NCBI GenBank assembly: GCA_976226885.1
Contig: OZ320316.1
Span: 77,066,001-77,130,000, forward strand
Origin: Iphione sp. A-MEVVRFRX5
Taxonomy: Eukaryota
Direction of reading: 5' to 3'
DNA: 64,000 nt
Below, one piece after another: positions 28,501 to 63,025 of the stretch (position 1 is its first letter; each line of letters opens with the position of its first letter). A model generated the notes under the pieces. That model was not told the origin of the DNA, did no database searches, and saw only the letters and a program-made list of their open reading frames with translations. Made by a program: the position numbers and the translations under genes.

Positions 28501-30134
28501 TTTCTTAATTATTTATTGCTTGTCGTCAGCTGAGAGTAGTTCATGTGAGACAGGGCACAAGTTCAGCTATTATGTACAGCTGGACAACAGCTTGAGGTCC
28601 AGATACCAGAACAAATTCTCCACAGACCGAACCGTATCCTGTGCTGCTGACCGTCTGTGGTTTACTTCTACTACTCTGAAGACACCTGTTTGTTGTACGA
28701 TTTATTCAATATACACCGTGTAAGCAATTACATATACTGCCTGCGAGAATTTCTAACATGTCTGACCACAATATTATTAAACAGAGTTTAAAAACCGGTT
28801 CATTCATAGAAGGCTGAGCTGCAAAATGAAATATGGTGCAACGAGCCCATATAGCCAGACATTCACAAGCACAGTCTGATATGGCCGTTATACATCTTTA
28901 ATCGCACCATACTTTGGGCTCTTACAGTCTATCAGTGAAGAATCGTCCACATATCGACTCTTACATTAGCTGCTGTTGCCAAACGTTTTGTATGATCACC
29001 AATAAAACGAAGTGAAGAACCATAAATCGTCAACGCGATGATACGGTCCACTGAAAACTTAAACAGCAGCAGCCACCGTCACAGTTGATATCCAAGCGAA
29101 CGTAATTTCTGATTGGTGTGTATACGTATATGTGAGCGTATGTGGAACTACAGACCTATATTCCTTCAATGGTAAATGATGCATGTTTTTTCTATTATGT
29201 GCATAAAGTGTGGACGAATGAGAAAAATGGACCATGATTATTTTTCATGGATCCATAGAATAGAGATAGAAGTATAGAAAAAGAGACACAGAGATCATGG
29301 ATGTGGGTATGGAAAATACATGTATAGAATAAATATGAATCTCTCTGTTAAAGATGTTTATGAAAAATTTCTTTATGCAGAATCTGCAAAAGGCAGAATG
29401 TAAGCAGAATCTGAACCTTTCACAAAAACATACCTGCACATATGCAATGACAAACAAGCAAATATATGAGTATGCACAGCCATATACATGTAATATTTTC
29501 ATAACACTATACATGTGTATGCAAATACACAGTATATGTACATTTCTCGTCCCTTCCATGAAGAAAACGTACATGTGCATAGGTCCACAGCTATCTGTAC
29601 TTCCTGCCTACCACATGCTGGAAAAATCCAGCTCACACGGCCCTGCGTGCACACGAATATCAAGCTTAAGCAGGCGGGTGACCCATCTAGGATGACAAAC
29701 TGTCCAAGGACCATCCACTTTTACCATCAGAGACATCAGGGAATCAACCAGCAACTGTCACATAATGAATTGCTCTCGCCCGAGGCAGCGGGGCCTGGAC
29801 AACTAACGGGGTATCCATAACTGCCTTTGGGGGATACTATTTTTAATATATGTGTGTAACCTTCAAAGAGCGAGGACCGAAAGTCTTCCGGAGAACATTT
29901 TCTGTTCTTTTCTCAAATATAAGAATACTGACTTAGAAAAAAAGCTATGTAATAAATGTACACACAAAATCTGAAACGATTCAAGAAGTCGTAAGTGCAT
30001 GCCCTGAAAATTAAATACACCAGACGGCATCTGAAAAGACATGTTATTATACGGGTGTATATTTGTAGAGGTGTAGTTCTATCATGAGCTGTAGCGCCAA
30101 CGTTTGCAACAGTAATTGATTGAATAATGCTAAC

Positions 30135-30227
30135 CTGGAAGTGGAGAATGATGGTCCATATGAGGCCAAGGGTAAGCTTCGGGTTTCCGTCCACAATCTC
30201 ATCTGGCCGAATATTCACCAACCGAAT
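30135..30227 (-). CDS. MACF1/DST/PLEC-like: CH1 exon equivalent to plectin exon 5: [31 protein letters not shown]
   Basis: Acceptor tttatcacattag, 93 nt, donor gttagc; ends in phase 0, so the next (CH2) exon must start in phase 0. Confidence 0.97.
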
Positions 30228-31982
30228 CTAATGTGATAAAACATAAGGCAATTAAATCGGCTGGTCATTATGAGTGTCACATGGTAAAACAATATATGTA
30301 CATGTACTCAGGTGTGATACCAAATTCATGAGACGTTTACAAATCTATCAATATCTGCGTCCAATTTCATTTCTCACCTAAGTCGAAAGAATCTTTAATA
30401 ATAATCCATCCTTTGCATGTTAAAACGAAAAGGGATCATGCCTGATCCCCTTGCAATGCAACTTGCAGTCCCGAATGCAATGTAAAGTATAACTGATGCC
30501 AACATACAACTGGTGCCATCTGTTGCGCAACACTGGCACCACATTATAGCGAGGATGTCTGAATCTTGTACTAAGAAAGCGTACAGCACGCTAAGACTTA
30601 ACTACGTAAATCTTTGCTTTAATAATACCATCTATCCTTTCAGATCGTTTATTTACAGCCCTTCGGGAAGAATGATTAAGGTAACAAACCATCAATTCAG
30701 GTTTGAGAAGTATGACTGATTAGGACTATTTTTAAATAATGTTTTTGGAGCCTGGGAAAAGATTTCAAAGCTTACTTCTCATACGAATGTATGAACGCAA
30801 GTCCAACTGAATAAATACCAAACCGTCAGGGAGGGAACTATCAACTGGTATTACTAATAATCATTATTTAAACTATTTTGGTTCGAATAAGAATTTACAG
30901 CAACATTTTACTCGTTCCTTCATTTATTTTGTAACTTGGATTATTTTAAACAGAAACTTGAGTGTGTCCACAGAATGATACAAATATGTCTTCAAACTGA
31001 ATATATGTTCTTTGTGACTACGGAAAGTGTAAATAGAATCTGGTCGAGACACCTTGAGGCGAACTTAAAAAAGGACGAAAATAATTCACATATTAATTAT
31101 CCCTCTCTTAATATAGAGGTAATTTATATTTGTGACACTTCGTTTTAGTGTCTCATTACCTAACCTTATCATGAGGTCTTCCCTTAAAAAATGACTTTCC
31201 GATATCTCCGGAACATACGCGATGAAAAACAATCTCTAATCTAACAGACCTGTCGCCATTACCTGCCCCGGCTGGTACTGAACACATATTCATTTCTCAT
31301 GAAAAGTAAGCATTCTTTCACAGACTGACAGCTCTATGTGAAAAACTCCTGTTATCAAAGTTTCGAGCATCCTTCCCCTTTTTGGACTCGCGTCCTGACT
31401 TGACAGTTACGGCTTTATTCACAAAAGAATCCACCTAGAGGCACTATCACAGAACGGCGTGGAAAACGGCCATAAATGTCCGTGTCAAGGACCTCATTAG
31501 GAAGTAAATGCCTCGTTGTCTGTGGATGTGTACCTGGCGTTATACATGTACGCTTATTTGTGCATCACTAGACGTTCATGGCTGCCAGTCTCTTTGATTG
31601 ACAGTGGGGCAGTTCTGTTACAGGATTCTGTGATTATTCTTCTGCATAACTCGTTTGCCACAACTTCAAATAGCATGCAGGCTAGGAATACGCCCATCCA
31701 CACAAGTGTCGGTAGGCCAACTAGACTGACTTTATCCCTTATATGCCAGGTTTCTAAGAGTCAACAAATATTCAGCAACCAATACCACTCTTCCAGTTAA
31801 AGTAATCCCCAGTTCCAAGCATTTTTAGAAAACATTAAAGAGACGTGAGCTGAGAACGTAAGCGTGGAACGAAATGGCTATCTTATACATCTCCCCATGG
31901 CAACACTGCAATTAGAAATATGGCATTCAAGAATAAAAACAGAATTTGATTAAATGAGAATCATCATGTAAAAGGTACTCAC

Positions 31983-32060
31983 CCCTTTATACTTCAAGAA
32001 GTCTAATGCTATCTGGACGTTTTGCAACTTGTGAAACCGCATGTGGCCCCTCTCTCGAGG
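31983..32060 (-). CDS. MACF1/DST/PLEC-like: CH1 exon equivalent to plectin exon 4: [26 protein letters not shown]
   Basis: Acceptor ccgatttatag, 78 nt, phase 0/0, donor gtgagt; matches [20 protein letters not shown]. Confidence 0.97.
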
Positions 32061-32288
32061 CTATAAATCGGAAGGAAAATCATATTTTAGAACGATTCTC
32101 ATAAACAGTGTGCACGTTAAAACTTTTGTGATGATGATTATTTTCATTCATAATAAAAATGCATAATAAAATAGAAATGCTTCTCAACAAATTCTATTTC
32201 CTAGGGTTGGATCGGGTCTGAGCATTCATCCAACAGATGACAGAATATGGCTTCCTGCCAAGTAATACTTATTTAATAATGCACTCAC

Positions 32289-32378
32289 CATGGAATCCTG
32301 GGAGAGAACCTCAAGCAGCGTAATGAGGTTATGACCATCACGTAAATCTTCGAAGAGGTCAGTGACATGGCGGTGGAC
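32289..32378 (-). CDS. MACF1/DST/PLEC-like: CH1 exon equivalent to plectin exon 3: [30 protein letters not shown]
   Basis: Acceptor ctttaaatag, 90 nt, phase 0/0, donor gtgagt; contains [20 protein letters not shown]. Missed by the ORF track because it is short. Confidence 0.97.
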
Positions 32379-32944
32379 CTATTTAAAGTAGGGAGCATGT
32401 TTTAGGTGTATGTATGACGTTAATGAACGCTAGGCTGCCATAATATGTCGTGTAAAAAGTAAGTATGAAAGGCCAGGCACGGCGTCATTATAAATAATTG
32501 TTCCGATGTTTACTTGAATATCAACGAGGTCTGGTTGACACTTTGAAAGAGAGTACATGTAGTTTGAAACGACACATTAAAATCTAAAAGCTATGTTTAT
32601 ACTTTTTTTCTTTCACTGTGTTTCAGCCCAGTCTTCACCACAAATGACATATTTTACAAATGGATTTATTTTCAGCACCACATGGCAATACAACTTAAAA
32701 TATTGAAGCAGATTCAGTATTTACACCAAGGAAGAGAGTAGCAGTGGAGGCGAACTTAAGTCAATGCATGGCAGGGACCACTTACATGATTAAAGAAACT
32801 TCATCCTAAGTCTTCAATAGTAAGGGGTGACCTTTTACGGTGAAGACTTATATTTAAAGCCATACAGATAATTCAAACACCCATCAATCTTTCCACATTC
32901 ACACCTTACACTTTAGGTGAAGGTGAGCAAATTGAAAGACAAAC

Positions 32945-32962
32945 CTTGGGAAACCTCCAATG
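32945..32962 (-). CDS. 18-nt microexon HWRFPK (plectin 2-alpha-like)
   Basis: ttcttctttctgattatgtgcag|CATTGGAGGTTTCCCAAG|gtttgt; phase 0/0; begins HWR like HWRAE. Confidence 0.7.
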
Positions 32963-35900
32963 CTGCACATAATCAGAAAGAAGAAGTATGTCATTTAATA
33001 GTTTTACAAACGAGATGTCGTTGGAGGCTTTTTTTAAATAGAGCTATTTAATACCATTTTGAAGTAGCCACAATTTACTTAAATGGCGTCGGTAAAATCT
33101 AAATATTATTTTATAACTTAAGTTCAATTATACTCCCATAAGTTACTTGCCTTACTGAATTTACATGCTTTTCGTCATAAACTATACATGCCTGACAGTG
33201 GGTTAGTTCTGGTCTAATATCTTAATTTCTACGTTCTCATACTGAAATGCAGTAATCCGTGTTATGAAATACCTCTATATCTGCTTGTCTGCCTTCTGAA
33301 CTATACATGCCCTTATGATTTTGTCTTGATTACTCGTACGACAGGTCGATACTTAAAGACTGTCTCTACCATGAGTCAACATCAGCAAATCTCTACATAC
33401 ACTGTATGTATATTACGTATCTACAGCATCTCGTATTGAGAAATGCTAATTCATTTCTGGTATATATTCGGCTGATATTTTTCGTATCCTTCCTGTTTTA
33501 TTTCAACGACTATAGCATAAGGCTGAACGTTTCAATCAGGTAAACACGTCTCAAGGATTTTGACGATAGGCCGTCTTTGTAGCATACAGAATAAACCACT
33601 GATATATAATGCCATCCTCTCATATATATTCAACTTCATTGGAATGACATTATTTGAACTGGCTGTCAGCCATCTTGACAGCCCCTCCCACTTTTCCTCT
33701 ACCTTCCTTAAACCTTGACACTGCTGAGTCACACGGTGACTGAATACGCCCATCTGTACTAGCACGACATCTATCGTCGTCTGCAGGAAGCTCTTCTCCG
33801 CTTCACCACGTTGCTAGTTGAATTTTAACATTCTCGTTCCCAAACTTCTGTTTCCCATTATATACTGGGATATTATAGCTTCGGTAGATTTGCTCATCTC
33901 GCTGTATGATTATGTATACGAATGTGGTTGCGGGGTTATAAAATAAGAATCTACCAATGTATAAATTCACATTCCCCAATCATGGCTGACTCAAATTCTG
34001 CCTCATATCACCATACGTCAATACAGACATTATGGGCTTCTTGTAGTATAGGAAAAGAAGACAATTCTTTATAAACACTGCATTAAACTATTTGCATAAA
34101 GCTGGAATAAACGTTTGAACGAACTCCAAGCAAGATTCGTTGAAATCTTTGATTTACAAACACTCGTCGACACCACGTCCACCTAACATTGATCTAGACA
34201 GGTACATTCATGTATATGTTAATGCTTACAACTGCTCCGGTAAGTAAACACCTTATGCTCAATATTTCATTTTGGATGACTAAAGGGTTACAATCTCCCC
34301 ACGGACTAGGTCGGTAGTTTACGGGTAGCTAATGTAACGTATCTGCCACTGGTTGATGTTGTGTTGACGCAGTTGGGAGGTATTGGGGTGTGGTGGTTTT
34401 AAATCCCTACTGGGCCGCGAGAAGAACCAGCTGGAAATATGATGACATGCCCTTCAATGTTGAGTGGAACGTCCCTGGTGTTGGAAGAGCTGCATCTGCG
34501 GCATCTATGCCAGCATGGCGAGAAATCTATACATAGTTCTTCCTGATATTGATTAAATTGTATTAGGAATAGATTCTGATGGATAACACCTTATTAGGCA
34601 CGGGACCATATCGTCCATCGTTCTCTTCCAACATTTAACCGACATGTTCACTGGTCTCAACACCCCTTAGACACAAAATACACGTTTCGGAATATGTGTG
34701 CTCGTCCCCATAAGTTTCCCTAGTGGGTCCAAGATTAAACTGGCCTAAGACAGTACATTTAGATGTGGATCAAAATGATAGCTATATATGTAGATACCAA
34801 TCTTGAAATCTAAATACAGTTTGGGGGAGTGTGTCTTGCCACGAAAATATTTTGGAGTATTCATGACAAGAGTTGAAAGACATACTTATACTGTAAGTCT
34901 GCCGAATCCCCGCGGAGATGATTTCCACGTTAAGTAGCTGGTAATCCTTACTTGACTAAAGCATGCTGGTTTAATATGGAATTACATCTGTTAAGTCTTG
35001 TGGCAGACTTCCATGGAATATGGGGATTTTATTAAATAAACATACCGAAACGGGCAAGCAACAGCATAGTTTCTTCCGTGTTATTCTATATTTATGAATA
35101 CAAGAATTATAATCTAAGTTAAAAATGAGAAGTAGCTCGGGGGTGGAGTTAGTTTTCTGGAGACTTCCTAAGTTGAAATATTTGCAAATTTGAATTTCAG
35201 AACTGAGGAGGAGCTTTGCCAAATAGACGACCTGCAAAGTGTATCCCCCATCAGGTGGTACACGAAATGGGTGCGTTTCCCACGATGTACGGCTACACTG
35301 TGTGATCTCTAGTAGGGAATGAAAAATTCATTACAATCACCTTACTAAACTACCGGTGGTTGTCTCTCACCGGCCATCCCAGTGTGTATGTGTAGGAGAG
35401 GCAGTGATTGGTAGTAACATTTTTTTCAATTTGATTTCCTTCCACGAATCATATCTTTTTGAACGAAAATCACTACATGTGCATGTTATGTTCATTTCGA
35501 TTCTGAGTAACACTCGACAAACAGAAAATCAGGATACAAGAGAGAGAGGCCACCCATCCCACCACACTGCTGTTGTCTGTGAAGAGTTTATGCACAAATT
35601 AGCAAGCTATTGTATCGTCCCTTAGTGATAGTTATAACTCAATTTACAGAGGCAGTGAGCGTAAACTGGATGAGACCCATCTCAACCAGGGATATAATTC
35701 CCCCACCCGTGATTAATATGGTGAAGTTACACCCACCCACACCGTTAACCAAGTGAATGCATGAGAGAACGTTCTTCATAATGTGATCCCAGTGACCGAC
35801 CTAAACACCTGCGTCAATTCAGTTGAACGCAAATACCTGGATAATATCGACCGGGTGTATGGGTCCAGTAATCCTTAATATGGCTGTAAAGACTAAACAG

Positions 35901-36752
35901 CTTATGATACGCATATCCTAAACGGTAAGCATGAATCTCAATGGCTTATAGATATGTGTTCTCTAGAATATAGTTGCACACGCTGGTAAACTTTAATAAA
36001 ACGATATTCCTGTTTTCCCTGACCGTCATAGCTCCACTGAAACAACACAATCCCACTTTCTCCCACAAACACCTCAGTTCATTGACGGAACGATCATGTC
36101 AGAACTTTATAAAGCAATCTTCGTCGTGCCTTTACTCATAGAACGGTTTCGAGACTAGAGATGCTTGAAAGCTCGAACACGCTAAAAACTAGGACTTCCC
36201 ACGTAGTCTCGTTGAAAAATCTTTCTTTCTCTCATGTGATTGTCGTCCATTTTAGCACAATTGTACGCTAAAATTCCCATTATTCGTGCACCCCCTTACA
36301 GTTTAGCATGACACCATTTGCATGGGAAGGGTTGTGACAATTAAAAAGCATGCGATACCCCCCATACACCATCAGATCCACATGCAATGCACTGACATCT
36401 GCTTCTGTTTTTCTTATAGTAGGTGTTAGGATTAATATAGCAACCTTTTAACTTTTTTCTTGACGATCCATTCCTTTAAACACTCGTTATTCCGCAAGAC
36501 ACAAAACAAAAATCAGTTTGAGTATGGCCTCGTTGTGTTAGTTTTCTTCCAAGCAACAAAATCGTCCCATTTAGTTTTTTGTAAAGGGGGGTCCCTGAAC
36601 GGCACGTGTGATGATGCGTCAGTCTTTAAAGGCAACCATTTCGCTTTGCTCCAAATGTTAACCATGACCGCAAGGCCAAATAGAGGACGAACATGGGAGC
36701 AGGAGAGGTTAGAGAACATGAACATCCATAAACCAAATTACAGTCAGCTTAC

Positions 36753-36767
36753 CTTTTGGTACCGATG
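36753..36767 (-). CDS. 15-nt microexon HRYQK (plectin 2-alpha-like)
   Basis: ctgttatattcttattttcaaacag|CATCGGTACCAAAAG|gtaagc: strong acceptor and donor, phase 0/0, same size and position as plectin 2-alpha (HWRAE). Confidence 0.75.
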
Positions 36768-39700
36768 CTGTTTGAAAATAAGAATATAACAGATGCAATT
36801 ACTGCTCCAATACTCATGAAAATCAACGTGTTTTACACACTTTCGATGGGCTATTTTTATGACTATGTATCAAGAAGGCACAAATTTCTTCGTATGACAC
36901 TAGTATATGTGATTCTATGACTGTGGTTTATCATACCAAGTCTACTTATGAAATTATCCTGTCACATATAGTAGTGGTAAGTACCAAGTCATCAGCAGTC
37001 CAATCCAGTTGTCAATGATGAAAAAAACTGGATTCCCATAATGACTGAGAGTCTGGCACAAACAGAGTGTCACAGAAGTATGAAGACACAATATACCAAC
37101 AAAAACGCCTCTGTTCATTGCCTACTTCAAAGAACGTGATGCTCTCTATTTCATCGCGACGCCATACATACAGGCATTCATTCTTCGAACGAACACAATC
37201 TGCTGGTTCAAAAAATGCCCCACAGCATTAACTAACGGTTACGGTTGCGCTATATATAACTTAATGAAACCAATTACGAATCGCACCTACTCGTCCTTTT
37301 GGTCGGAGTGAGAAAAACAGAATTTCAATGAGGGTGTGAGAGCGACCCAAGCAAAGTCTCTGGAAAATACACTGGATTTCCCAAGTGGCAACAGGCGATA
37401 GTTCATGCATTCAGGAAACAAATATTTCAAGTTCCGAATGCATGTACATGTACATGCAGATCACTATCAACTGTCATTTGGTGTAGCACTTCAGGACATG
37501 GTAATCTCGGAGTCATCGGTATACAATCTTAAGGGGAATAAATATTGATAGCCAAAATAGGAAACTGCACATCAGTTAAATCGGAGGGAATTCATCTCAA
37601 ATATGCCACACCATCACGTTAATGATGCGATCTTGAAAGATGGCTCGAAGTTGAGTTTTAAAGAATCCATAGTAAAAAAATTCCTTACTTTATTCGCGAT
37701 GAGTGGCAGCATTGTTAGATATACTTACACATATCCAAAACTAATTAAAAAATGGTGTCATATGTACATGTATTTTGCTACACTGTGTGAGCCAATTGCT
37801 CAAACTAAAATCTGATGGGTTTAAGGTGAATTGTTTGAAAATTACTTAATTTGTCGCACCACAAATTGCCATTAAAAAACATTTAGTAACTTTAACCTTC
37901 ATAGGTATTGCAGTTGGTGTGATATCATATACACGGTCGTTCTGAATCAGTTAATACCCCTGGCCATGGCGGCTTGAAAAAAGGCGTCCTAATTATACGG
38001 GCTGAAGTAAGGGTTACATCAGTCACAATGGTCCCCCCCGCGGGCAGAAGTAAGGATCGTTGTCAAAAAGCCATACACATGTACACCTCCGCTCTTAAAG
38101 GTCTCCAACCACGCGCCATTATTAGACTAAAAGCGGCTCTTTGGGTGGCGATGCATTCATCACGATTAAAAAAAGACTGGGAGGTGGAGTGGGGGATGGC
38201 ATGCAACATCGAATGCAGGCATTCGGGTTGAGAGCGGTCGGTACGGGTCTCCGAATATAGGCAATCGTGCAATGCCGAAATATAAAATTCAAACGCTAGC
38301 TCACTAAGAGAGACATTGTATACATGTACTTGAGAGCGAACATAGGCGCACAGTTAGGTAGCCTCTTTATCTTGGAATAATACGTGTACTGCCTACGTGT
38401 TGGTACCCATCGTCTGTACGTCCGATTGAGGAACCTGATGGATTCAGCCTCGTAGTTCTTCTAGTCAGCGAAGCATTGTGAAAATAATGCATTCTCTTCT
38501 TTTCATGGATATTCATCACTCTTGTTGCTTTGTCGGGCACGTTGTGGCTTAGAAAATAGCTAAGTACATTTTTACACTAGATAAAGTTGGTAAACCCGAA
38601 TTTTCATGTGACCATGCTTCTCGTTTGTGTGTTCGTGCAACACAGATGGATGTTTTTTTTACTGAAGCAAGTTCCAGTCAAAGAAGCACAGATCCTTGTT
38701 ATTGACATGGACACATGGACAAGAAGGACCGTCAAATGAAAACTGGGACTGAAAGCCTTTTTGTGGCACAACATGCCTGCGCGGACACTGCTTGGTGTAT
38801 TTATCAGTTCAAGCAGAAATTTCCTGCCATAAACCTTCTCGTAATACTAAAACATTCACACTTGACGTGTGCTGCTTAAATATATCGAACCGAGTTTATT
38901 CTATCCTGAGTCTCGCCATACACCGGGCTACTTTCGTGGGAAAAAATGGACGTTGTCTTTGGGACCAACATGACATGAATCTCGGGCTTTTGTATACATA
39001 TATATTAGTTATTCAGACGTTGAACTTCCGTGATGTCCTTGTTAAACATCAGTAGTAGCAGTGATGACTGATGCACGCGATTCGGATCAATGGTTTTCGC
39101 CCTCTCCCTGTCTGTCTCCCTCACACAACTGATGCTGACCAAACGCAGAATATTTCGCAAAGACTTGGAAAGTTAGTATGGCTTTGTTCCACTAATACAA
39201 AACATTGCCACCTCTAATATACAAATCGATGGCGTTTATTTCTGAGATGCATGTTTCAAGCCGTTCATTTAACGGTTGAAATGTCTCTGCGTGCTATTTG
39301 CTATTATCCCTGAAAAATCAGGGAATTGGATGGGGACTGACATTGTGGGAGGGAGGGAAGGAATGTCTGCGTGGGAGGTTTTTACAGATGTCAGTGTATG
39401 GTTGACTAATACAATAATATGAAGGAAAACTTCGGGATCGGGTAATTCAAAGAAAGTAAGGCATTATCCGGAGATGTAAATGCCGACAGGACGCCCGTGT
39501 TGAAAGAAAGCCACGTATTACTTGCAGCGACGAAACCCAGTTTCCTTATGCACTGAGTATGTTCAGTTATCATTTTCGGCGAATTGAATGGTGCGTCAAT
39601 GATTGATAACTTATCAGATCTTATCAGTATATTGATGCCGGTAGACATGAAACACTTTCAAGAGCTGGGTTCGTGGAACAGGTCGTTTTTGTTCTAAGTC

Positions 39701-46294: not shown

Positions 46295-46435
46295 NNNNNN
46301 NNNNNNNNNNNNNNNNNNNNNNNNNNNNNNNNNNNNNNNNNNNNNNNNNNNNNNNNNNNNNNNNNNNNNNNNNNNNNNNNNNNNNNNNNNNNNNNNNNNN
46401 NNNNNNNNNNNNNNNNNNNNNNNNNNNNNNNNNNN
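46295..46435. other. Assembly gap (N run)
   Basis: 141 consecutive N. Confidence 1.
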
Positions 46436-61920: not shown

Positions 61921-62083
61921 NNNNNNNNNNNNNNNNNNNNNNNNNNNNNNNNNNNNNNNNNNNNNNNNNNNNNNNNNNNNNNNNNNNNNNNNNNNNNNNN
62001 NNNNNNNNNNNNNNNNNNNNNNNNNNNNNNNNNNNNNNNNNNNNNNNNNNNNNNNNNNNNNNNNNNNNNNNNNNNNNNNNNNN
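61921..62083. other. Assembly gap (N run)
   Basis: 163 consecutive N, adjacent to a minisatellite and probably a collapsed array. Confidence 1.
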
Positions 62084-62963: not shown

Positions 62964-63025
62964 CTTTATTAAATGTTTATTGACCCATTTGGTAAAGGTC
63001 TTCTTTTGTACAGAGTCGCGTTCAT
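62964..63025 (-). CDS. MACF1/DST/PLEC-like: CH1 exon equivalent to plectin exon 2: (D)[20 protein letters not shown], phase 1 in, phase 0 out
   Basis: Acceptor ttttttttcag, 62-nt exon, donor gtgagt; peptide nearly identical to plectin [21 protein letters not shown]. Confidence 0.97.

What the first reader, a model, noticed from the sequence alone, without database searches (positions are those of the whole stretch)
32945..32962. Second 2-alpha-like microexon HWRFPK, suggesting a duplicated microexon pair
Seen: 18 nt, phase 0/0, long pyrimidine tract with TGC next to the AG, peptide starting HWR. Both microexons start with His and end with Lys. Inference: duplication of an ancestral microexon giving combinatorial or mutually exclusive inserts (none, 5 aa, 6 aa, 11 aa) after CH1 helix A, more than the single 2-alpha of plectin.
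Basis: partly seen in the sequence, partly recalled or inferred. Interest (0 to 1): 0.72.

Follow-up and report, generated by a model that had tools for sequence, protein, structure and literature searches.

The report
Ancient optional mini-exon in actin-binding head
The 18-base HWRFPK segment is very probably a real optional mini-exon of a giant cytoskeleton-linker gene and is the worm counterpart of plectin exon 2-alpha, kept at the same spot from molluscs and arthropods to mammals; its use in RNA could not be checked here.

Summary
Observation confirmed. On the minus strand, 32962-32945 reads tgcag|CAT TGG AGG TTT CCC AAG|gtttgt (HWRFPK, 18 nt, phase 0/0). It lies in the 30.6-kb intron between the CH1 exons ending KHLIK (62964) and starting [12 protein letters not shown] (32378).

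Splice-like form alone is not special: the intron holds 678 in-frame AG..GT candidates. Conservation is what counts. A deeply diverged genome (L002) has HWRFQK with the same gtttgt donor, and only exons and the two mini-exons align. Lottia, Mytilus, Priapulus, thrips, a louse and about 15 metagenome contigs carry an HW-type mini-exon in the same intron. Octopus RefSeq isoforms exist with it (X3) and without it (X9). Vertebrate plectin 2-alpha is HWRAE/HWKAE at the identical junction.

So HWRFPK is the ancestral 2-alpha orthologue, not the "second" copy. The lineage-restricted extra is HRYQK (36753-36767), found only here and in L002. Its origin by duplication is possible but unproven, and combinatorial use is untested because no RNA run was listed.

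Likely mechanism (inferred): a regulated, perhaps neural, insert at the end of CH1 helix A that tunes actin or microtubule binding.

The follow-up on the neighbouring finding in this same window (s1-347259) reached the same orthology. I re-tested it for molluscs, arthropods and vertebrates; annelid membership I could not check.

The parts
62964..63025 (-). CH1 exon '2' (62 nt), encoding ..ERDSVQKKTFTKWVNKHLIK and ending in phase 0 before gtgagt
   Evidence: sequence; matches plectin and MACF1 actin-binding-domain chains in PDB, residues 1-20.
36753..36767 (-). Upstream 15-nt mini-exon HRYQK (cag|CATCGGTACCAAAAG|gtaagc); the lineage-restricted member of the pair
   Evidence: Counterpart HRYYK at L002:2927-2941 is the only His...Lys/Arg candidate in 8.2 kb and is collinear in blastn. 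No counterpart found in molluscs, priapulid, insects or HWEFRK-type loci.
32963..32990 (-). Acceptor region of the HWRFPK mini-exon: pyrimidine tract cttcttctttct followed by TGC directly before the AG
   Evidence: TGC lies within 12 nt of the acceptor in 13 of 20 distinct HW-exon loci, against 4 of 20 exon-3 acceptors. The acceptor also reads tgcag in Lottia, Mytilus and Priapulus.
32945..32962 (-). 18-nt mini-exon CATTGGAGGTTTCCCAAG = HWRFPK, phase 0/0; orthologue of plectin exon 2-alpha
   Evidence: 16 of 18 nt match L002:8219-8236 (HWRFQK), and blastn gives 92.9% over 28 nt including the splice sites. HW-type exons occupy the same intron in many taxa.
32939..32944 (-). Weak donor GTTTGT
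   Evidence: The same GTTTGT donor occurs in L002, Lottia, L033 and 8 of 9 HWEFRK loci.
32289..32378 (-). CH1 exon '3' (90 nt), [30 protein letters not shown]
   Evidence: best PDB matches are plectin actin-binding domains (E 3e-10).
31983..32060 (-). CH1 exon '4' (78 nt), [26 protein letters not shown]
30135..30227 (-). CH1 exon '5' (93 nt), [31 protein letters not shown]

Best explanation
32945-32962 (minus strand) is a real, evolutionarily ancient cassette mini-exon of the single spectraplakin/plakin gene of this animal. Other notes of this scan take the animal for an annelid. The exon is the orthologue of vertebrate plectin exon 2-alpha. When included, it inserts six residues (HWRFPK) in frame between ..KHLIK, the C-terminal end of CH1 helix A (classical actin-binding site 1), and [12 protein letters not shown]. 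By analogy with plectin 2-alpha, this should change the actin-binding head's affinity for F-actin and possibly for microtubules. The cis-elements are a pyrimidine tract, UGC abutting the AG, and a conserved weak GUUUGU donor. Together they suggest regulated, probably neuron-enriched, Srrm/eMIC-type inclusion. What is shown: sequence, phase, conservation, orthology of position. What is inferred: optional use in this species, tissue specificity, the regulator, and the effect on binding. The upstream HRYQK mini-exon is a younger addition in this lineage.
For: (1) Anatomy and phase. (2) The insertion point is identical to plectin 2-alpha. PDB chains 1SH5/1SH6 and 1MB8 read KHLIK-HWRAE-AQRH, while 4Q57, 4Q58, 3F7P and MACF1 4Z6G lack the five residues. 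(3) Deep conservation at DNA level: blastn against L002 aligns only exons 3-5 and the two mini-exons, in collinear order. The mini-exon with its splice sites is 92.9% identical, against 77-86% for the constitutive exons, and the introns do not align. (4) Genomic HW-type exons lie between the exon-2 and exon-3 homologues in Lottia (HWRFSQ), Mytilus edulis (HWRFTQ), Priapulus (HWHYVQ), the thrips Frankliniella and Megalurothrips (HWKYVK), the louse Menopon (HWKYMK), and in metagenome contigs (HWEFRK, HWRYYK, HWT..E, HWKPE) (taxa). (5) Annotated proteins carry the precise insert: Octopus bimaculoides isoform X3 with it and X9 without it, Priapulus, the spider Oedothorax, and plectin of bat, birds, sawshark and fish. 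(6) The pattern is strongly enriched: 22 hits in 215 kb upstream of exon 3, 0 in 248 kb downstream, 2 in 463 kb of reverse strand. (7) The cis-code matches what is described for eMIC exons, namely UGC near the 3' splice site, a long pyrimidine tract and a weak 5' splice site (PMC8797185; counts). (8) Function of 2-alpha in plectin: enhanced actin binding, and with 3-alpha enhanced microtubule binding, in brain-specific variants (PMC8464768; PMC7891324).
Against: No RNA evidence for this genome: no sequencing run was listed, so neither inclusion nor skipping was seen here. The inclusion evidence in other species is gene models (RefSeq and GenBank), not reads that I inspected. The three spliced cDNA-like metagenome contigs all lack the insert. 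UGC enrichment is counted over loci that are partly close relatives, and L002, Menopon and a fish plectin locus lack it. The AlphaFold model of the Octopus domain places the insert at the end of helix A but with pLDDT below 50, so its conformation is undetermined. The effect on binding is only an analogy with plectin.
Confidence: 0.8

Rival explanations
1. One reading: HRYQK and HWRFPK are products of a tandem duplication of one ancestral mini-exon. Taking the polarity found here, HRY would derive from HW. The two would then be used combinatorially or mutually exclusively, giving 0, 5, 6 or 11 extra residues.
For: Both are conserved, in the same order, in L002. Both start with CAT and end with AAG|gt. 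HRY[QY]K fits the HW-family consensus H-W-[RKEH]-[FY]-x-[KQE] minus the Trp. In arthropods the same intron holds two optional exons that gene models combine freely, so combinatorial use has a precedent.
Against: The flanks of the two exons show no similarity; MAFFT did not even align the exons to each other. The lengths differ (15 vs 18 nt), the Arg codons differ (CGG vs AGG), and the donors differ (gtaagc vs gtttgt). Fifteen bases are too few to tell homology from convergence under the same structural constraint. The end of exon 2 (HLIK|gt) shows the same His...Lys pattern. No RNA data bear on which combinations occur.
Confidence: 0.3
2. A chance AG...GT open frame in a long intron that merely resembles plectin 2-alpha.
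For: The intron has 678 in-frame AG..GT candidates, 35 of them with a pyrimidine-rich upstream region. The donor GTTTGT departs from the consensus.
Against: The same exon sits in the same intron and phase in many phyla. Its sequence and even the GTTTGT donor are conserved where the introns are otherwise unalignable. The pattern is enriched more than 25-fold over control sequence.
Confidence: 0.02
3. The exon is conserved but in this species it is either constitutive (always included) or a silent relic that is no longer spliced in.
For: No RNA from this genome could be examined.
Against: The frame, AG, GT, pyrimidine tract and UGC are all intact. In Octopus both forms are annotated. Cassette use is the documented state in plectin. 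Spliced contigs of other invertebrates lack the insert, which argues against constitutive use in general.
Confidence: 0.1

Closest known systems
Plectin exon 2-alpha (mouse and human PLEC; 15 nt, HWRAE; present in PDB 1SH5/1SH6 and 1MB8)
   Same: Same intron (between the exons ending KHLIK and starting [AV]xRH..DL[FY]EDL), phase 0/0, and an opening CAY-TGG-basic (HWR/HWK). It is an optional cassette in the actin-binding domain.
   Different: 18 nt and 6 residues instead of 15 nt and 5. It ends in Pro-Lys rather than Ala-Glu. The host is the single invertebrate spectraplakin gene, not the plectin paralogue. A second mini-exon (HRYQK) lies upstream. No counterpart of exon 3-alpha was noticed: intron 3 is only 228 nt, but it was not scanned in detail.
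Annotated invertebrate isoforms with a 6-residue HW insert: Octopus bimaculoides 'plectin isoform X3' (HWRFSQ), Priapulus caudatus 'plectin-like' (HWHYVQ), spider Oedothorax gibbosus (HWRYLE); genomic exons in Lottia and Mytilus
   Same: 18 nt, same junction, and HWRF shared with the molluscs. The acceptor reads tgcag and, in Lottia, the donor is also gtttgt.
   Different: The last two residues differ (PK here, SQ/TQ in molluscs). None of these genomes showed an HRY-type upstream exon.
Srrm234/SRRM3/4 (eMIC)-dependent neuronal microexons
   Same: Length of 27 nt or less and in frame, UGC close to the 3' splice site, a pyrimidine tract with alternating C and U, and a weak 5' splice site. This is the cis-code described in PMC8797185. 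Plectin 2-alpha itself is used in brain.
   Different: Dependence on Srrm and neural specificity are untested here. That paper's main text does not name shot, Macf1 or Plec.
Arthropod Cys-rich optional exon (TYTCLHVC...CC.P, 16-21 residues) in the same intron
   Same: A second optional in-frame exon between CH1 exons 2 and 3, combined with the HW exon in gene models as both, either or neither.
   Different: It lies downstream of the HW exon rather than upstream, its sequence is unrelated, and it is absent from this window and from L002.

Membership tests
Plectin exon 2-alpha-type mini-exon (CH1 helix-A insert) | Lies in the phase-0 intron between the exon ending ..KW[VI]NKHLxK and the exon starting xxRHxxDL[FY]EDLRDG | tested here: met
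   The junction is identical to the position of the HWRAE insert in 1SH5 and 1MB8.
Plectin exon 2-alpha-type mini-exon (CH1 helix-A insert) | 15-18 nt, a multiple of three, no stop codon, AG/GT bounded | tested here: met
   18 nt, tgcag|...|gtttgt.
Plectin exon 2-alpha-type mini-exon (CH1 helix-A insert) | Peptide opens with His-Trp followed by a charged, mostly basic, residue | tested here: met
   HWR here. HWR, HWK, HWE, HWH, HWN or HWT in 20 or more loci and proteins.
Plectin exon 2-alpha-type mini-exon (CH1 helix-A insert) | Orthology supported by conservation where the flanking intron is not conserved | tested here: met
   against L002 only the exons and the two mini-exons align; enrichment control.
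Plectin exon 2-alpha-type mini-exon (CH1 helix-A insert) | Optional (cassette) inclusion in mRNA | not testable with these tools
   No RNA run was listed for this genome. Indirect: Octopus isoforms X3 and X9 (without).
Plectin exon 2-alpha-type mini-exon (CH1 helix-A insert) | Inclusion raises F-actin (and microtubule) binding of the actin-binding domain | not tested
   Known only for plectin (PMC8464768; PMC7891324). The AlphaFold model of the Octopus domain has pLDDT below 50 at the insert.
eMIC/SRRM-dependent neuronal microexon | 27 nt or less, in frame | tested here: met
   18 nt.
eMIC/SRRM-dependent neuronal microexon | UGC motif close to the 3' splice site, downstream of a long pyrimidine tract | tested here: met
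   cttcttctttctgattatgTGCag. 13 of 20 related loci against 4 of 20 control acceptors, but the loci are not independent.
eMIC/SRRM-dependent neuronal microexon | Weak 5' splice site | tested here: inconclusive
   GTTTGT departs from GTRAGT at +3 and +4 and is conserved. No quantitative splice-site score was computed.
eMIC/SRRM-dependent neuronal microexon | Neuron-specific inclusion that depends on the eMIC domain of Srrm234 | not testable with these tools
   No RNA data.
Mutually exclusive exon pair | Two adjacent homologous exons of like size with a mechanism that prevents co-inclusion (frame, steric, or RNA pairing) | tested here: not met
   15 vs 18 nt, both in frame so co-inclusion keeps the frame, 3.8 kb apart, both GT-AG, flanks dissimilar. 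RNA pairing was not examined.

The most novel reading that the evidence does not exclude
The HW mini-exon is one of the very few pan-bilaterian microexons, more than 550 My old, kept at one junction from annelids, molluscs, priapulids and arthropods to vertebrate plectin, and lost from MACF1 and DST. It would be regulated by the ancestral Srrm/eMIC neuronal programme. Its intron would be a hotspot that independently gained a second optional exon in separate lineages: HRY-type upstream in this worm lineage and a Cys-rich exon downstream in arthropods. That would give each lineage a small combinatorial set of actin-binding heads.
Probability: 0.35. Interest if true: 0.65.

Novelty: new member of a known kind. 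Interest (0 to 1): 0.5.

Why it matters
Microexons shared between protostomes and vertebrates are rare. A fly-mouse comparison found only four exons at equivalent positions in the two eMIC programmes (PMC8797185). A mini-exon that keeps its position, its His-Trp start and even its splice-site flavour across Bilateria, inside the best-studied actin-binding fold, marks a functionally important and tunable spot at the end of CH1 helix A. It makes plectin 2-alpha biology testable in invertebrate models. It also suggests that the ancestral spectraplakin already had a neural or muscle variant of its actin-binding head. In the library searched I found no paper that links plectin 2-alpha to invertebrate spectraplakin microexons. 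The exon is, however, already present in some RefSeq isoform models.

Tried and rejected
- RNA evidence: the look-up of sequencing runs on 29900-37000 listed no run.
- Profile search with exon-by-exon rows (A2): among 30-96-residue fragments it found only mammalian-type HWRAE and no invertebrate inserts.
- Alignment of 100-nt flanks of the two mini-exons: no similarity, so no DNA support for duplication.
- Representative search with exon 3: mostly genomic read-through fragments. These were useful only as handles to fetch loci.
- Spider locus L005 (Trichonephila): no HW exon within 10 kb upstream of exon 3, only the Cys-rich exon. The HW exon probably lies further upstream, since the Nephila protein P0271 has HWRYLE.
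- The Octopus P0294 locus was not on record.
- AlphaFold model of the Octopus actin-binding domain: mean pLDDT 69, and below 50 at the insert. It was not used for fold searches.
- Literature: 'HWRAE' gave 0 papers. 'microexon' plus 'plectin' gave 2 unrelated papers.
- Chance-ORF reading: rejected.
- Mutually exclusive reading: no structural support.
Natural proteins from the database (Octopus P0294 and others) were used instead.
- L007 (a 1.1-kb metagenome contig with mammal-type plectin exon 3 and HWRAE) may be human. It was caught in one bulk scan before I recognised it, then dropped from all later scripts and not searched further.

Full report
**1. What is in the sequence**

The gene runs on the minus strand. 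Exon "2" (63025-62964) encodes ..ERDSVQKKTFTKWVNKHLIK and ends on a full codon before gtgagt. Exon "3" (32378-32289) encodes [30 protein letters not shown]. Exons 4 (32060-31983) and 5 (30227-30135) complete CH1. The best solved relatives of exons 2 and 3 are the actin-binding domains of plectin and MACF1.

Inside the 30,585-nt intron 2, at 32962-32945, the strand reads catacttcttctttctgattatgtgcag|CATTGGAGGTTTCCCAAG|gtttgt, which translates to HWRFPK. It is 18 nt in phase 0/0, with a pyrimidine tract and TGC abutting the AG. A 15-nt candidate, HRYQK, lies 3.8 kb upstream at 36767-36753.

**2. Is it more than chance?**

Shape alone is not. The intron contains 678 in-frame AG..GT candidates of 3-10 codons, and 35 of them have a pyrimidine-rich upstream region.

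The specific form AG|CAYTGG + 5-6 sense codons|GT is different:
- In the whole window it occurs once on the minus strand and never on the plus strand.
- Across 78 related loci it occurs 22 times in 215 kb upstream of the exon-3 homologue on the coding strand.
- It occurs 0 times in 248 kb downstream and 2 times in 463 kb of the reverse strand.

**3. Identity with plectin 2-alpha**

PDB chains 1SH5/1SH6 (mouse) and 1MB8 read KHLIK-HWRAE-AQRH. Chains 4Q57, 4Q58, 3F7P and MACF1 4Z6G join KHLIK directly to the next exon. So the known five-residue 2-alpha insert sits at exactly the junction where HWRFPK would be inserted, and it starts with the same His-Trp-Arg. Database fragments give HWRAE in bat, bird and sawshark, HWRPE in a tit, and HWKAE in fishes. 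Reviews place 2-alpha between exons 2 and 3, report brain-specific variants that carry it, and report enhanced actin binding, observed in skeletal muscle (PMC8464768). Together with 3-alpha it also enhances microtubule binding (PMC7891324).

**4. Conservation at the DNA level**

I fetched genomic loci around exon-3 homologues. L002 is a 1.6-Mb eukaryotic contig of an ENA assembly.
- L002 has cacgcag|CATTGGAGGTTTCAAAAG|gtttgt (HWRFQK) 1.8 kb upstream of exon 3.
- It has cag|CATCGATACTACAAG|gtaaga (HRYYK) 5.3 kb further upstream.
- blastn of 35 kb of the window against L002 aligns only exons 5, 4 and 3 (77-86% identity), the HW mini-exon with its splice sites (92.9% over 28 nt) and the HRY mini-exon (83% over 30 nt).
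- These matches are in collinear order, and the introns do not align at all.

The two genomes are therefore deeply diverged, and both mini-exons are under selection.

**5. Breadth of the HW-type exon**

HW-type 18-nt exons lie between the exon-2 and exon-3 homologues in named genomes:

| Organism | Locus | Peptide |
|---|---|---|
| Frankliniella fusca (thrips) | L003 | HWKYVK |
| Megalurothrips usitatus (thrips) | L004 | HWKYVK |
| Menopon gallinae (louse) | L006 | HWKYMK |
| Lottia gigantea | L085 | HWRFSQ, catgcag...gtttgt |
| Mytilus edulis | L086 | HWRFTQ |
| Priapulus caudatus | L087 | HWHYVQ |

These come; the taxa are.

A scan of JGI metagenome contigs added nine loci with HWEFRK (tgcag acceptor; gtttgt donor in eight of the nine), one with HWRYYK, five with HWT..E, one with HWKYVK, and a fish-type plectin locus with HWKPE. 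The taxa of those contigs are unknown to me.

At the protein level:
- Octopus bimaculoides RefSeq "plectin isoform X3" reads KHLLK-HWRFSQ-ASRR, while isoform X9 lacks the six residues.
- Priapulus "plectin-like" has HWHYVQ.
- The spider Oedothorax has HWRYLE.
- None of 66 MACF1/DST-type vertebrate fragments carried an HW insert (65 had no insert at all), against 6 of 42 plectin-type and 11 of 84 invertebrate-type fragments. This sample is biased.

This independently confirms the conclusion of the follow-up on the neighbouring finding s1-347259 for molluscs, arthropods and vertebrates. The annelid part I could not verify by name. That this genome is an annelid is taken from other notes of the scan and I did not check it.

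**6. Which of the two is the extra one?**

The HRY-type exon was found only in this window and in L002. It is absent from the complete exon 2 to HW-exon intervals of thrips, louse, L034, three HWEFRK loci, Lottia and Mytilus. It is also absent from the sequenced part of the Priapulus interval; that locus contains about 13 kb of N.

HRY[QY]K fits the HW consensus H-W-[RKEH]-[FY]-x-[KQE] minus the Trp, which keeps a duplication origin plausible. However, the flanks are dissimilar, and 15 nt cannot separate homology from convergence. I put duplication at about 0.3.

**7. Mechanism**

Shown: an in-frame cassette-shaped exon with conserved splice signals at the C-terminal end of CH1 helix A.

In an AlphaFold model of the natural Octopus domain, helix A runs to the first two insert residues and the rest is coil. 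pLDDT is below 50 there, so the conformation is open.

Inferred:
- Optional inclusion. This is documented for plectin and annotated in Octopus. Three spliced invertebrate contigs lack the insert.
- Regulated, probably neuronal, inclusion. UGC next to the AG occurs in 13 of 20 distinct loci against 4 of 20 exon-3 acceptors, and again in Lottia, Mytilus and Priapulus. With the pyrimidine tract and the conserved weak GTTTGT donor, this matches the cis-code reported for eMIC-dependent exons (PMC8797185).
- An effect on F-actin and microtubule binding, by analogy with plectin.

Nothing in the anatomy forces the two mini-exons to be mutually exclusive.

**8. What could not be done**

Conservation of that very donor in L002, Lottia and the HWEFRK loci argues that it is used.

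By rule I searched the spliced model exon by exon and left the joined step out. N runs at 46295-46435 and 61921-62083 were not touched. L007 is a short contig with mammal-type plectin sequence, possibly human. It was set aside once recognised.

**9. Novelty and verdict**

The exon is a new member of a known kind: the plectin 2-alpha mini-exon, already modelled in some invertebrate RefSeq isoforms. In the searchable library I found no paper describing its bilaterian conservation or its link to microexon programmes. The fly-mouse comparison reports only four positionally shared eMIC exons.

The two-mini-exon arrangement in this lineage, and an independent Cys-rich second exon in arthropods, are modestly new variants. 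Interest 0.5.

Noticed in passing
L003:10177, L004:8256, L005:4894, L006:16788, L012:2706, L035:2757, L037:9024, L038:9438; proteins P0271-P0285: Arthropods (spiders, horseshoe crab, scorpion, shrimp, many insects) have a second optional exon in the same intron, downstream of the HW mini-exon. It encodes a Cys-rich peptide TYTCLHVC...CC.P of 16-21 residues. Gene models carry both exons, either one, or neither. It is absent from this window and from L002.
   Followed up: partly
window 36753-36767 (-) and L002:2927-2941: The upstream mini-exon HRYQK is conserved as HRYYK in L002, with a strong gtaag donor. It was not found in molluscs, priapulid, insects or HWEFRK-type loci.
   Followed up: yes
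window 62964-62978 (-): The last residues of exon 2 (H-L-I-K|gt) show the same His...Lys|GT pattern as both mini-exons. This could reflect helix periodicity or an origin of the mini-exons from the 3' end of exon 2. Pure speculation.
   Followed up: no
L018, L027, L032, L033, L034: A group of unidentified eukaryote contigs (exon 3 AGRNVRDLFEDL) has a 6-residue variant ending in Glu (HWTVVE, HWTVTE, HWTHYE, HWTVLE, HWTAAE). The C-terminal Glu is as in vertebrate HWRAE.
   Followed up: no
proteins P0330 (Pleuronectes platessa), P0301 (Excalfactoria chinensis): Vertebrate plectin-type gene models with divergent inserts at the same junction (HRRGPE, HSCKK). They may be diverged 2-alpha exons of paralogues or model errors.
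   Followed up: no
L007 (Ga0126362_10060269, 1099 nt): A metagenome contig with mammal-type plectin exon 3 and an HWRAE exon 117 nt upstream. It may be human or another mammal, and it was left aside after one bulk scan.
   Followed up: no
window 46295-46435 and 61921-62083: Two runs of N inside intron 2. They were left untouched, so a further small exon hidden there cannot be excluded.
   Followed up: no
proteins (tally): None of 66 MACF1/DST-type vertebrate fragments had an HW insert at the junction, while plectin-type fragments did. This suggests the mini-exon was kept only in the plectin paralogue after the vertebrate duplications.
   Followed up: partly
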